Notes: a model not told the origin generated them from the letters alone. 64,000 bases of DNA from Sphaerodactylus townsendi (GCF_021028975.2 NC_059428.1:138570001-138634000); one strand, 5' to 3'. Counted from the stretch's first letter, positions 14,024-45,941 are shown. Translations and numbers: made by a program.

Positions 14024-14279
14024 GACACCCGCATGGGAACAGATGCCCTGCACTTTCCCTTAAAAAGATGTCTCACAGTGGAAACCTACGGGCTGAGTTG
14101 GCCGACCCCAACCCCCATCAACTGGAGCCTCCTGGAAGGATGCAAGCCCCCTGCCAAGCCAGGCCCTCTATGTAACTGCTGAAACCAGCCAAGTTCGGGG
14201 GGGGGGGGGGGGCTGAGCAATCCACACACATCAGGGCGGAGATCCCACTAAGCCCGTGTCTGGATCGGTGGGAAGGCGC

Positions 14280-15500
14280 CAGACTCGCCTCACTTGCGGA
14301 GCCTCTTCACGAAGCTGACCTCGTCCCGGTTCCGGATGCCATACCTGCAAGCAGCACGGCGGGGTCACTTAGGTCCTAACCCCTCCCCCGCCCAAGAGAC
14401 CCCCCTGCCCCCCCAACTCACTCGCGAAGCTTCTTGCGATCGTCGTCCAGCTTCTCGCCCCCGAAGGCCAGGCTGTATGTCCGCCACACGCGCCTCCTGC
14501 GGGAAAAACCGGCGGTGGGCGGGGGGGGGGGGAAGCGTAGCATGGTGGTTAGCCTTGGGAGCGGGGGCGGGGGGGGTCCCTTCCCAGCCTTCCCCCCCGG
14601 GGGGCGGGGCTCACCAGCTGATGTGACGGACGCCGCCCTGGCGCTCCTGGCGGAGTTGGAGGAAGCGCTGCAGGGCCTTCTTCAGGTCCAGCACGGCCGC
14701 CTGCTGCACCACCACCACCGCTGCGGGGACAAGGGAGAAGAGCAGGTCAGGTCGGGCCGGGCCGCCCACCCGCGCGCATGCTCAACAGCGCCCCGCCACT
14801 CACGCATGGGCTCCGCGGCGTCCGGTCTGCGCACGCGCACCGTAATCGCCTGGCCGTACTCCAGCGCCACCTGCGAGGCAATCTCTTCCGGGGTCACCTA
14901 ACGAAGGAAAGAGGGGAAGCACGCCCGCGTGATTGGCCGCCCGCCCGCCGAGCGACAGCACGCCGTTCCGCCCCCTCGCTAGCCGAGGCCTCACCTGAGC
15001 CGGCAGGTCGCAGAGCAGCGGGTCCCGCACGAGGCGCGCCAGTCCGGCCTGCCAGAGCGCCACCGCCTCGGCGTGCGCCAGCTCCTCGCCCTCCTCCTCG
15101 CCCGCCATGCTGCTGTTCTGCCCGGCCTGCGGGAACGTGCTGGTCGCCGAGGAGGGCACGCGCTGCCTCCGCTTCGCCTGCACTACGTGCCCCTACGTCC
15201 GCAACGTCACGCGCAAGGTGGGTGTGGCCTCTACACTAGGGCCCCGACGGCGCCAACCTCCCGGCTGGGCCTGGAGGCCTCCCGGGGGTCTCCAGGCAGC
15301 TCCTCCGGACGAGGGGGCGGGGGTGGTGCCGCCCTCCCATCGCCGCGGCTTCCCTCTCCCACCCGGACTGACGCTCTCCCTTCCCTCTGCAGGTGACCAG
15401 CAGGCGCTACCCGAAGCTGAAGGAGGTGGATGACGTCCTCGGGGGAGGCGCCGCTTGGGAGAATGTGGACTCCACTGCTGGTCAGTGGGCGCGGGTTTTG
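14280..15500. promoter_or_regulatory. CpG island covering SNRNP25 and POLR3K exons 1-2, with interleaved promoters
   Basis: Very high GC and CpG density. CCAAT box (ATTGG, 14932-14936), NRF1-like GCGCGCATGC (14772-14781), GC box at 15311-15324. Confidence 0.8.
14290..15108 (-). CDS. SNRNP25: U11/U12 snRNP 25 kDa protein, 5 exons, 147 aa
   Basis: Exons 15108-14995, 14897-14804, 14720-14615, 14496-14422, 14344-14290; GT-AG, phases consistent, 444 nt. Peptide ...DPLLCDLPAQVTPEEIASQVALEYGQAITVRV...PVVVVQQAAVLDLKKALQR...YGIRNRDEVSFVKRLRK*. The start codon is inferred as the only in-frame ATG upstream of the conserved region. Confidence 0.95.
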
Positions 15501-16402
15501 GGGGCTCTGGGAGGAGCAGATAGTGGGGTGGAAAGAGACCCCCCCCCAGAGCTGCTGCCTGGCTGAGCAGACAAGATCCAAGGTCTGCCCCAGTATCAAG
15601 ATCTAGGGTACCAGTGGAGTATGAACAGTCAGTGTGGTGCAGCAGCAAAAAAGGCTAATGCGATCTTAGGATGTATCATAACATCCGAATCGCAAGATGT
15701 CCTAGTCCCACTGTATGCCACTGTAATCAGGCCACATCTAGACTCCTGTGCACAGTTATTGGTGGACTCAGTTCAAAACACGTGGACAGAATAGAGCAAG
15801 TGCAGAGGAGACCAACAAGGATGATCGGGGCCCGTGACCAAGCCATGAGGAAAGGCTGAGGGACTTGGGGATGGTTCGTCTGGATAAGAAGAGGTTAAGG
15901 GTGGACATGATTCCTCTTGTGGAGTATTTGAAGGGCTGTGTCTTTAGAGGAGGGCAGGGAGCTGTCCCTGTTGGGAGCAGAGGGCAGGACTCGCAATCAT
16001 AGGTTTAAATTAGACAGAAAGGTTCTGGTTGGATGGGGGGGGGGGGGATCTTACAGTAAGAGTTGTGCAGCAGTGGAATCGGCTGCTTCAGGAGGTGGTG
16101 AGCTCCCGACTGGCAGTTTTAAAGCAGCAGCAGGAGAAACGGGCTGCTCTAGTCAGGGATCGCTCAATGGGGCAGGGGGTTGGACTAGATGGCCCTCCTT
16201 TGTGTGCTCATGTTGTGCGGGGGCTCTGCTGGTGTGGCCCATCTCTGAATTAACCCCATCCTTCCCTCCTGCAGAGCCATGCCCCAAGTGTGAGCACCCA
16301 CGGGCTTACTTCATGCAGCTGCAGACGCGCTCGGCCGACGAGCCCATGACCACCTTCTACAAGTGCTGCAGCCCCCAATGTGGACACCGCTGGCGGGACT
16401 GA
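15107..16402 (+). CDS. POLR3K: RNA polymerase III subunit K (RPC10/C11), 3 exons, 108 aa
   Basis: Exons 15107-15217, 15393-15480, 16275-16402 (327 nt). [10 protein letters not shown]...[11 protein letters not shown]...[30 protein letters not shown]...HRWRD*: two zinc ribbons and the TFIIS-like RSADEP motif. Confidence 0.98.
15620..16195 (+). mobile_element. Degraded CR1 LINE 3' fragment in POLR3K intron 2
   Basis: Remnant CR1 ORF2 C-terminal peptides ([29 protein letters not shown]) and CR1 3' UTR GGGGTTGGACTAGATGGCC. Confidence 0.75.
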
Positions 16403-16438
16403 GCCCAAAGACACGCAGGCCGCTTCCTACAAAGTCAC

Positions 16439-16444
16439 TTTATT
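16439..16444 (-). terminator. Probable GTF3C1 polyadenylation signal AATAAA
   Basis: TTTATT on the + strand, 35 nt beyond the GTF3C1 stop, inside the 77-bp gap between the two stop codons. Confidence 0.65.
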
Positions 16445-16479
16445 GGCCAATGAGTCCCACATCCTCTCCCCTCCCCCCA

Positions 16480-45941
<29,462 letters not shown>

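What the first reader, a model, noticed from the sequence alone, without database searches (positions are those of the whole stretch)
15095..15120. Two genes share one CATG: interlocked start codons of SNRNP25 (-) and POLR3K (+)
Seen: the POLR3K ATG is 15107-15109 (+). The only in-frame ATG upstream of the conserved SNRNP25 region is 15108-15106 (-), so both come from the palindrome CATG. Both have good Kozak contexts (cccGccATGc and cagcAgcATGG), each encoded by the partner's first codons. Neither strand has an upstream ATG for more than 200 nt. The position of the recalled human initiator Met is Val here. Inference: each mRNA's 5' UTR is the antisense of the other's first coding exon, so the TSSs must be crossed rather than divergent. 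A sense/antisense duplex would mask both AUGs at once, allowing mutual transcriptional or translational coupling of a minor-spliceosome subunit and a Pol III subunit. Head-to-head arrangement of these genes is known in mammals; I do not know a report of shared start codons.
Basis: partly seen in the sequence, partly recalled or inferred. Interest (0 to 1): 0.85.

Follow-up and report, generated by a model that had tools for sequence, protein, structure and literature searches.

The report
Two gecko genes share one CATG start
In geckos the first codons of two housekeeping genes on opposite DNA strands (SNRNP25 and POLR3K) overlap in a single CATG, so each messenger RNA must begin inside the other gene; this is real and conserved but is the extreme end of an already very tight gene pair, and no regulatory coupling has been shown.

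Summary
At 15106-15109 one CATG gives the POLR3K ATG (+, 15107-15109) and the only usable SNRNP25 ATG (-, 15108-15106). The window matches Sphaerodactylus townsendi, and NCBI's 147-aa SNRNP25 model starts at this ATG.

The same CATG is present in Heteronotia, Paroedura, two Gekko species and three unnamed gecko contigs. A second Sphaerodactylus species shows no listed change there. So it occurs in both Gekkonidae and Sphaerodactylidae.

Other sauropsids keep a short ATG-to-ATG spacer:
- Eublepharis, 24 nt
- Anolis, 30 nt
- a bird, 35 nt
- a skink, 71 nt
- a snake, 77 nt
- a turtle, 101 nt

The stretch between the CATG and the residue aligned to human Met1 carries a motif (E-L-A/P-H-A-E) conserved from sharks to mammals. 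SNRNP25 translation must therefore start upstream of the GTG, and the human Met1 is the derived state.

RNA-derived contigs from two CATG geckos run straight across the CATG into spliced mRNA, so the 5' ends overlap. No transcription start site was mapped, because no RNA run was on offer for this species.

I read this as a new variant of the known divergent overlapping gene pair.

The parts
15106..15109 (.). CATG palindrome. ATG of POLR3K on + (15107-15109) and ATG of SNRNP25 on - (15108-15106).
   Evidence: The same CATG is in L002, L003, L009, L011, L012, L013 and L014. DNA contigs of independent runs show it unchanged.
15107..15217 (+). POLR3K coding exon 1 (37 codons, N-terminal zinc ribbon), with a GT donor at 15218. 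Its antisense must hold the SNRNP25 leader and probably the SNRNP25 start site.
   Evidence: Fewer codon columns vary synonymously here than in exons 2+3 across 8 squamates: 12/34 against 40/58, Fisher p = 0.0023.
15218..15392 (+). POLR3K intron 1, G+C-rich and poorly conserved among geckos. Candidate upstream promoter region for SNRNP25. Holds the nearest - strand upstream ATG at 15340.
15393..15480 (+). POLR3K exon 2.
   Evidence: tblastn of Gekko POLR3K (P0248) on the window, plus the splice letters.
16275..16402 (+). POLR3K exon 3 (C-terminal TFIIS-type ribbon) with the stop codon.
   Evidence: Exon lengths 111 + 88 + 128 = 327 nt, which is 108 aa plus the stop.
14995..15108 (-). SNRNP25 coding exon 1 (38 codons: acidic N-terminus, LAHAEA motif, LLCDLP block), with a GT donor at 14994-14993. 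Its antisense must hold the POLR3K leader.
14898..14994 (-). SNRNP25 intron 1. Contains a CCAAT box (- strand, 14936-14932) present in all five geckos aligned, about 170 nt upstream of the POLR3K ATG. Candidate POLR3K promoter element.
   Evidence: Alignment A3 and motif scan. The box is also in RNA contig L014, position 60.
14804..14897 (-). SNRNP25 exon 2.
14614..14720 (-). SNRNP25 exon 3 (start of the ubiquitin-like domain).
   Evidence: (Pfam Ubiquitin_4, E = 1.8e-7).
14421..14495 (-). SNRNP25 exon 4.
14290..14343 (-). SNRNP25 exon 5 with the stop codon.
   Evidence: The five exons sum to 444 nt, which is 147 aa plus the stop.
14250..15500 (.). CpG island centred on the CATG (G+C up to 0.73, CpG observed/expected up to 1.05). 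The shared promoter region.
14774..14783 (-). GAGCATGCGC block (NRF1-like half site) in SNRNP25 intron 2, identical in all five geckos aligned.

Best explanation
**What it is.** The CATG is the genuine start codon of both genes. SNRNP25 (a minor-spliceosome 25K protein) and POLR3K (Pol III subunit RPC10) form an old head-to-head pair driven from one CpG island.

**How it arose (inferred).** In sauropsids the distance between the two ATGs had already shrunk to 24-101 nt. In an ancestor of Gekkonidae and Sphaerodactylidae the last of the spacer was lost and the two ATGs came to interlock. After that, purifying selection on two essential start codons froze the arrangement. A change at the A or the T destroys both ATGs.

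**What follows for transcription.** No spacer is left, so each gene's start site, and part of its promoter, must lie inside the other gene's first exon or intron. The two 5' leaders are therefore antisense to each other's first coding exon. This step follows from the sequence and is supported by RNA contigs in relatives.

**Candidate elements (inferred).**
- A gecko-conserved CCAAT box in SNRNP25 intron 1 may serve POLR3K.
- G+C-rich POLR3K intron 1 and exon 1 may serve SNRNP25.
- The SNRNP25 ATG sits in a context close to the TISU/YY1 element, so it may be read from a very short leader.

**What is not shown.** Nothing shows that the overlap does more than the usual co-expression from a bidirectional promoter.
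For: **Sequence**
- Searches show both ATGs and both exon-1 reading frames.

**The SNRNP25 start is used**
- P0001 (S. townsendi, 147 aa) matches the exon-1 translation at 100% identity and begins MAGEEE.
- All 17 full-length squamate models carry the acidic N-terminus plus AHAE.
- In 29 vertebrates from sharks to mammals the motif before the human-Met1 position is conserved, with an invariant His.
- The CATG-to-LAH distance is 27, 30, 42, 24, 33, 48, 54 and 42 nt in eight gecko sequences, always a multiple of 3.
- Eublepharis differs from the others in this motif by synonymous changes.

**Distribution**
- The CATG is shared in L002, L003, L009, L011, L012, L013 and L014.
- Spacers elsewhere: Eublepharis 24, Anolis 30, Molothrus 35, Tiliqua 71, Logan contig L010 71, Pseudonaja 77, Emys 101 nt.
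- Families were checked.

**Transcript overlap**
- L009 is one RNA contig holding spliced POLR3K, the CATG and spliced SNRNP25.
- L014 holds spliced POLR3K plus 239 nt upstream, collinear with the genome. Contiguity at word length 31 (Logan's) needs the two leaders to sum to about 30 nt or more.

**Promoter reshaping**
- Non-gecko sauropsids have an ETS motif (CCGGAAG) in the spacer and no CCAAT box in SNRNP25 intron 1.
- Geckos have the reverse.

**TISU resemblance**
- The consensus is SAASATGGCGGC, with a median leader of 12 nt.
- The match is 10/12 here and 11/12 in Heteronotia and L011.

**Extra constraint**
- POLR3K exon 1 has fewer synonymously variable codons than exons 2+3 (p = 0.0023).

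**Known background**
- Divergent overlapping pairs are common and the most strongly co-expressed class.
- The human pair is co-expressed.
Against: **No start site was mapped**
- No RNA run was on offer for this species. The four runs laid were genomic DNA.
- De Bruijn contigs are strand-blind and can join two transcripts. L009 and L014 therefore show that RNA crosses the CATG, but not which gene's RNA or how far.
- The unspliced intron 1 in L014 could be SNRNP25 pre-mRNA rather than a POLR3K leader.

**Weak points in the start-codon argument**
- The multiple-of-3 rule is weakened because the acidic stretch is made of GAG/GCG triplet repeats, which slip in threes anyway.
- An upstream alternative first exon of SNRNP25, or non-AUG initiation, is not excluded by direct data.

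**Weak points in the mechanism**
- The TISU match is imperfect: G instead of A at -2, and the last base differs in this species.
- The low synonymous variation in POLR3K exon 1 is seen in all squamates. It could instead reflect G+C saturation of third positions (GC3 0.94-1.0).
- Whether the fusion is neutral or selected cannot be told from these data.
Confidence: 0.72

Rival explanations
1. Functional coupling. The obligatory complementarity of the two leaders is used by the cell. A sense/antisense duplex, or polymerase traffic through the shared CATG, ties the output of a minor-spliceosome subunit to that of a Pol III subunit, and the arrangement is kept for that reason.
For: - The arrangement has persisted across two gecko families.
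- POLR3K exon 1 is unusually constrained at synonymous sites.
- The human pair is tightly co-expressed (PCC 0.70).
Against: - Persistence is fully explained by selection on two essential ATGs.
- The synonymous constraint is found equally in squamates that have a spacer.
- Co-expression is the rule for divergent overlapping pairs in general.
- Eublepharis and all other sauropsids do without the fusion.
- No RNA data bear on duplex formation.
Confidence: 0.1
2. SNRNP25 does not start at the CATG. It begins at the GTG at 15063-15061 (aligned to human Met1), at another non-AUG codon, or from an unseen upstream exon. The ATG in the CATG would then be a coincidence in the leader.
For: - No start site or protein N-terminus was observed directly.
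- The Gekko kuhli annotation (P0019) starts further in, at MELWQ.
Against: - The E-L-A/P-H-A-E motif upstream of the GTG is conserved from sharks to mammals.
- Within geckos it changes only synonymously.
- The CATG is in frame with it in all eight gecko sequences.
- Gene models for S. townsendi, Heteronotia, Paroedura and Gekko japonicus all use it.
- RNA contig L009 is collinear through the ATG with no splice.
- The G. kuhli record is flagged by its source as unverified, and its DNA has the same CATG in frame.
Confidence: 0.07
3. Assembly or annotation artefact. A collapsed or mis-joined stretch removed a real spacer between the genes.
For: The region is 73% G+C, a composition at which short-read assemblies often fail.
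Against: - Independent genome assemblies of four other gecko species, and three Logan contigs, have the same junction.
- DNA contigs of three runs of this species span it unchanged, and a contig of a second species shows no listed change there.
Confidence: 0.01

Closest known systems
Divergent (head-to-head) overlapping protein-coding gene pairs with a bidirectional CpG-island promoter
   Same: - Two genes on opposite strands share one CpG island and have 5' ends that overlap.
- The class is common in human (157 divergent overlapping pairs; 51 pairs with overlapping coding regions).
- It shows the strongest co-expression of any overlap class.
- POLR3K with C16orf33 (the old name of SNRNP25) is itself a listed human head-to-head pair.
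   Different: - Here the spacer between the coding regions is below zero. The coding overlap is exactly the two central bases of one CATG, so the two initiation codons are physically the same base pairs.
- I found no paper describing this. That covers the searched library only.
[quoted passage not shown]
   Same: - The SNRNP25 start reads CAGCATGGCGG(G/C/A). It has A at -3, C at -1 and GGCGG after the ATG.
- It sits in a housekeeping gene that has very little room for a leader.
   Different: - The match is 10/12 here and 11/12 in some geckos, with G instead of A at -2.
- Its distance from a start site, which defines TISU, is unknown.
- YY1 binding was not tested.
Cis-natural antisense transcript pairs with regulatory duplexes
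   Same: The two leaders are perfectly complementary by construction.
   Different: - No evidence of duplex formation, RNA editing or reciprocal regulation.
- Both partners are broadly needed housekeeping genes rather than a regulator and its target.
The same gene pair in other sauropsids (Anolis, skink, snake, turtle, songbird, Eublepharis)
   Same: - Same gene order: RHBDF1, SNRNP25, POLR3K, GTF3C1.
- Same exon-1 proteins.
- ATGs only 24-101 nt apart.
   Different: - A short spacer remains. Outside geckos it carries an ETS-type CCGGAAG motif.
- The CATG geckos have lost the spacer. All geckos, Eublepharis included, carry a conserved CCAAT box in SNRNP25 intron 1 instead.

Membership tests
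Divergent overlapping gene pair / bidirectional promoter | Two protein-coding genes on opposite strands, pointing away from each other. | tested here: met
   POLR3K on + from 15107 and SNRNP25 on - from 15108. Domains by Pfam, orthologues.
Divergent overlapping gene pair / bidirectional promoter | Start sites less than 1 kb apart, in a CpG island. | tested here: inconclusive
   The CpG island is shown (G+C 0.73, CpG o/e 1.05) and the ATGs coincide. No start site was mapped: there was no RNA run and only DNA contigs.
Divergent overlapping gene pair / bidirectional promoter | The mature transcripts overlap at their 5' ends. | tested here: inconclusive
   It follows logically if both ATGs are used. 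RNA contigs L009 and L014 of other CATG geckos cross the junction, but contigs are strand-blind. Not tested in this species.
TISU element | Match to SAASATGGCGGC with the ATG as initiator. | tested here: inconclusive
   10/12 in the window. 11/12 in Heteronotia and L011 by the scan, and the same letters can be read in Gekko japonicus. Consensus taken.
TISU element | Lies about +5 to +30 from the transcription start (median leader 12 nt). | not testable with these tools
   Needs CAGE or 5' RACE. Definition.
Regulatory cis-antisense pair | Both RNAs are present in the same cells, and the duplex or the act of transcription alters the partner's output. | not testable with these tools
   No RNA data for this species.
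SNRNP25 orthologue | Ubiquitin-like domain (Pfam PF18036) plus the conserved N-terminal LLCDLP block. | tested here: met
   Exon 3 matches PF18036 at E = 1.8e-7. The LLCDLP block is invariant in 29 vertebrates. P0001 maps to five exons.
POLR3K (RPC10) orthologue | N-terminal RPB9-type zinc ribbon and C-terminal TFIIS-type ribbon, 108 aa. | tested here: met
   Exon 1 matches PF02150 at E = 3e-8. Exons 2 and 3 are 93-98% identical to Gekko POLR3K.

The most novel reading that the evidence does not exclude
The interlocked CATG is a working dual initiation element. A single palindromic site acts as a core-promoter and translation-start signal in both directions: TISU/YY1-like for SNRNP25, and Kozak GCC-G-CC-ATG for POLR3K. 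The two mRNAs have very short, mutually complementary leaders, and their production is mechanically tied through shared factor binding, polymerase traffic or leader pairing. That would link the supply of a minor-spliceosome subunit to that of a Pol III subunit.
Probability: 0.1. Interest if true: 0.7.

Novelty: new variant of a known kind. Interest (0 to 1): 0.5.

Why it matters
This is a natural limiting case of a bidirectional promoter. There is no intergenic DNA at all between two essential, unrelated housekeeping genes, and it has been kept across two gecko families.

- **What it forces.** Every promoter element of each gene must sit inside the other gene's transcribed and partly coding sequence. 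Each leader must be the antisense of the partner's first coding exon.
- **What it makes testable.** How little dedicated promoter DNA a CpG-island gene pair needs. Whether very short leaders of the TISU type are used outside mammals. Whether overlapping 5' ends have any cost.
- **A built-in comparison.** Sauropsids offer a graded series of spacers (101, 77, 71, 35, 30, 24 and 0 nt).
- **For annotation.** SNRNP25's N-terminus is older and longer than the human reference start suggests.
- **If it is only a frozen accident.** It remains a tidy curiosity and a caution that coding ranges on opposite strands can legitimately overlap at their starts.

Tried and rejected
**RNA evidence for this species**
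- The look-up of sequencing runs listed no RNA holder.
- The four runs laid were genomic DNA. They gave no splice joints over the two genes and no molecule ends. They confirm the sequence only.

**Upstream-ATG depletion as evidence for long leaders**
- Rejected. Dinucleotide shuffles give P = 0.57 and 0.72 for a stretch this free of ATGs.

**First pass at synonymous divergence**
- Discarded, because BLAST alignments ran into introns (seen).
- Redone exon piece by exon piece.

**Pfam on SNRNP25 exons 1 and 2 alone**
- No family found. The pieces are too short.

**Literature**
- No paper was found on shared or interlocked start codons of divergent eukaryotic genes.
- One search failed on a syntax error.

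**Earlier findings of the scan**
- Nothing on this feature.

Exons were searched one at a time by reference. One search used a stop-free read-through reference with region 1-40. Full-length comparisons used database proteins (P0001, P0002, P0248).
- No human contig was fetched, and the human locus was not examined.

**Limits of the RNA contigs**
- The species behind the Logan runs of L009, L010, L011 and L014 could not be named with these tools.

**Outgroups**
The spacing outside sauropsids is therefore not measured.

Full report
**1. What is in the sequence**

The window has no N runs and sits in a G+C-rich region. A CpG island runs from about 14250 to 15500, peaking at G+C 0.73 and CpG observed/expected 1.05 around the finding.

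On the + strand, ATG at 15107-15109 opens [17 protein letters not shown]..., which matches the RPB9-type zinc ribbon (Pfam PF02150, E = 3e-8). This is POLR3K exon 1 (15107-15217, GT donor at 15218). Exons 2 (15393-15480) and 3 (16275-16402) were placed with the Gekko protein.

On the - strand, ATG at 15108-15106 opens a 38-codon exon ([38 protein letters not shown]) with a GT donor at 14994. Four more exons follow and sum to 147 codons plus the stop. Exon 3 matches the SNRNP25-type ubiquitin-like domain (PF18036).

The two ATGs are the two readings of the CATG at 15106-15109. Upstream of the SNRNP25 ATG the frame stays open for 28 codons, which are the antisense of POLR3K exon 1, and holds no ATG.

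The contexts are encoded by the partner's second codon:
- Ala2 of SNRNP25 (GCG) gives POLR3K its G at -3.
- Leu2 of POLR3K (CTG) gives SNRNP25 its A at -3.

**2. Is it an artefact?**

No.
- The exon-1 translation is 100% identical to NCBI's SNRNP25 of the gecko Sphaerodactylus townsendi (P0001, 147 aa), which starts at this ATG.
- DNA contigs from three runs of one organism span 14563-15667 with no difference at the CATG.
- A contig of a second, related organism (14624-15198) has nine differences. Eight are listed and none lies in the CATG. The two inside the first exons (15043 and 15115) are synonymous for Gly22 of SNRNP25 and Leu3 of POLR3K.

**3. Is the - strand ATG really the SNRNP25 start?**

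The alternative was the GTG at 15063-15061, which aligns with the human Met1. The evidence is against it.
- Every squamate model carries an acidic N-terminus followed by AHAE(A/V) before the WQAGLA block.
- In an alignment of 29 SNRNP25 proteins from sharks, ray-finned fish, lungfish, amphibians, sauropsids, marsupials and placentals, an acidic run plus E-L-(P/A/S)-H-(A/S)-(E/D) precedes the position of human Met1. The His is invariant.
- The N-terminal extension is therefore ancestral and translated. The short human start is the derived state.
- Within geckos the motif differs only by synonymous changes (Eublepharis TTG for CTG, GCT for GCC).
- The distance from the CATG to the LAH codons is 27, 30, 42, 24, 33, 48, 54 and 42 nt in eight gecko sequences, always in frame. 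I discount this somewhat, because the stretch is built of GAG/GCG triplets that slip in threes.

The POLR3K start is not in doubt. MLLFCP, with the first zinc-binding Cys at residue 5, is identical in every sauropsid locus read.

**4. How widespread is it?**

I fetched the locus for annotated proteins and for Logan contigs and measured the spacer between the two ATGs.

The CATG is shared in:
- the window;
- Heteronotia binoei, Paroedura picta, Gekko japonicus and Gekko kuhli;
- three unnamed gecko contigs (L009, L011, L014).

In Heteronotia, Paroedura and G. japonicus the annotated coding ranges overlap by 2 nt. These species belong to Gekkonidae and Sphaerodactylidae.

A spacer is present in:

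| Taxon | Spacer (nt) |
|---|---|
| Eublepharis (Eublepharidae) | 24 |
| Anolis | 30 |
| Molothrus, a songbird | 35 |
| Tiliqua, a skink | 71 |
| Logan lizard contig L010 | 71 |
| Pseudonaja, a snake | 77 |
| Emys, a turtle | 101 |

So the pair is extremely tight in all sauropsids sampled, and the CATG is the end point of that trend. The simplest history is loss of the last spacer bases in an ancestor of Gekkonidae plus Sphaerodactylidae. Loss of the CATG in Eublepharis is not excluded. From memory and not checked here, those two families separated roughly 100 million years ago.

**5. Do the transcripts overlap?**

If both ATGs are used, they must. There is direct but limited support.
- L009 is a 1061-nt contig from an RNA run. 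It contains POLR3K spliced across its introns, the CATG, and SNRNP25 spliced across all its introns, in one piece.
- L014, from a sister run, contains spliced POLR3K preceded by 239 nt that follow the genome through SNRNP25 exon 1 and unspliced intron 1 into exon 2. It holds no upstream ATG.
- At word length 31 (Logan's), a contig across the junction requires the two leaders together to be about 30 nt or more.
- Such contigs are strand-blind and can merge two RNAs. They show RNA across the CATG, not whose RNA it is.
- The intron-1 part of L014 may be a long POLR3K leader or SNRNP25 pre-mRNA.

For S. townsendi itself no RNA run was available, so no start site is mapped.

**6. How it probably works**

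*Shown.* There is one CpG island, no intergenic DNA, and strong initiation contexts on both strands.

*Inferred.* Promoter elements have moved into the gene bodies.
- In Anolis, skink, snake, turtle and bird the little spacer carries an ETS-type CCGGAAG motif, typical of bidirectional promoters, and there is no CCAAT box within 450 nt on the SNRNP25 side of the ATG.
- In all five geckos aligned the spacer ETS motif is gone. A CCAAT box in SNRNP25 intron 1 (window 14936-14932, - strand) is invariant, about 170 nt upstream of the POLR3K ATG. This is a plausible position for an NF-Y site serving POLR3K start sites inside SNRNP25 exon 1.
- A second invariant block (GAGCATGCGC, 14783-14774) lies in intron 2.
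- On the other side, POLR3K exon 1 shows fewer synonymously variable codons than exons 2+3 across eight squamates (12/34 against 40/58, Fisher p = 0.0023). SNRNP25 exon 1 shows no such deficit (15/21 against 50/70).
- That fits POLR3K exon 1 doubling as the SNRNP25 core promoter or leader. It holds in species with a spacer too, and may partly reflect third positions saturated with G+C.
- The SNRNP25 start (CAGCATGGCGG followed by G, C or A) is close to TISU (SAASATGGCGGC). TISU is a YY1-type element that supports scanning-free initiation from leaders with a median of 12 nt. The match is 10/12 here and 11/12 in Heteronotia and L011. If it acts as TISU, the SNRNP25 cap would lie within the first few codons of POLR3K, antisense.

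**7.

The idea that a duplex masks both AUGs and couples the genes has nothing for or against it in these data.
- Persistence of the CATG needs no such function, because a change at the A or the T destroys both ATGs.
- Co-expression is the norm for divergent overlapping pairs, and is reported for the human POLR3K/C16orf33 pair.
- The lack of upstream ATGs is what the composition predicts.

**8. Comparison with what is known, and novelty**

Divergent overlapping protein-coding pairs are a well-described class. One human-mouse survey counted 157 human divergent overlaps and 51 human pairs with overlapping coding regions.

What is unusual here is the exact geometry: a 2-nt coding overlap made of the two start codons themselves, in two conserved housekeeping genes, kept across two families. 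The overlap is implicit in public gene models of several geckos. I found no paper that mentions it, which speaks for the searched library only. I class it as a new variant of a known kind.

Exons were searched singly by reference, and full-length work used database proteins.
- No human contig was fetched or compared.

**10. Verdict**

| Item | Verdict |
|---|---|
| Observation | Confirmed |
| Shared start codons and crossed 5' ends | Well supported |
| Start sites | Unmapped |
| Regulatory coupling | Speculative |
| Interest | Moderate (0.5) |

Noticed in passing
window 14995-15063 (-) and alignment A2: The SNRNP25 N-terminal extension (acidic run plus E-L-P/A-H-A-E, with an invariant His) is conserved from sharks to mammals. 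Annotated starts vary widely (132 to about 240 aa in mammals). The short start that aligns with Val16 here looks derived rather than ancestral.
   Followed up: partly
window 15107-15217 (+); loci L001-L006, L012, L013: POLR3K exon 1 is almost frozen at synonymous sites across squamates (12/34 variable codon columns against 40/58 in exons 2+3, p = 0.0023). Paroedura and both Gekko species are identical over all 111 nt. SNRNP25 exon 1 shows no such deficit.
   Followed up: partly
window 14932-14936; L001-L008: Promoter motif turnover. Non-gecko sauropsids carry an ETS-type CCGGAAG in the ATG-to-ATG spacer. Geckos lack it and instead share an invariant CCAAT box in SNRNP25 intron 1 and a GAGCATGCGC block in intron 2 (14774-14783).
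   Followed up: partly
window 15577-16224: A high-copy repeat lies inside POLR3K intron 2. Summed contig word depth rises from about 20-115 to thousands in all four DNA runs, with many partial contigs and loose ends. Probably a transposable element; not classified.
   Followed up: no
L010:1-4929 and L014:240-1009; window about 16400-17285: RNA contigs join the 3' end of spliced POLR3K to the 3' end of spliced GTF3C1 on the opposite strand. This fits the tail-to-tail 3' overlap noted earlier on this window (s1-753619), with the same strand-blind caveat.
   Followed up: partly
window 15158-15169 (+): Sphaerodactylus POLR3K has Thr18 and Leu21 where the other sauropsid loci read have Ala or Pro at 18 and all have His at 21 (RCHRF becomes RCLRF). 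The second Sphaerodactylus species shows no listed difference there, so it probably shares both changes.
   Followed up: no
window 15266, 15538, 15548: The assembly differs from the laid DNA contigs. T>C at 15266 is seen in all three same-species runs. A CC insertion after 15538 is seen in two of those runs and in the second-species run X4. A>C at 15548 is seen in two same-species runs. All lie in POLR3K introns and are likely polymorphisms or small consensus errors.
   Followed up: no
window 14805-14808: A second CATG lies at the end of SNRNP25 exon 2 (Met69 on the - strand). Its + strand ATG at 14806 is the nearest upstream ATG for POLR3K. It has no evident significance.
   Followed up: no
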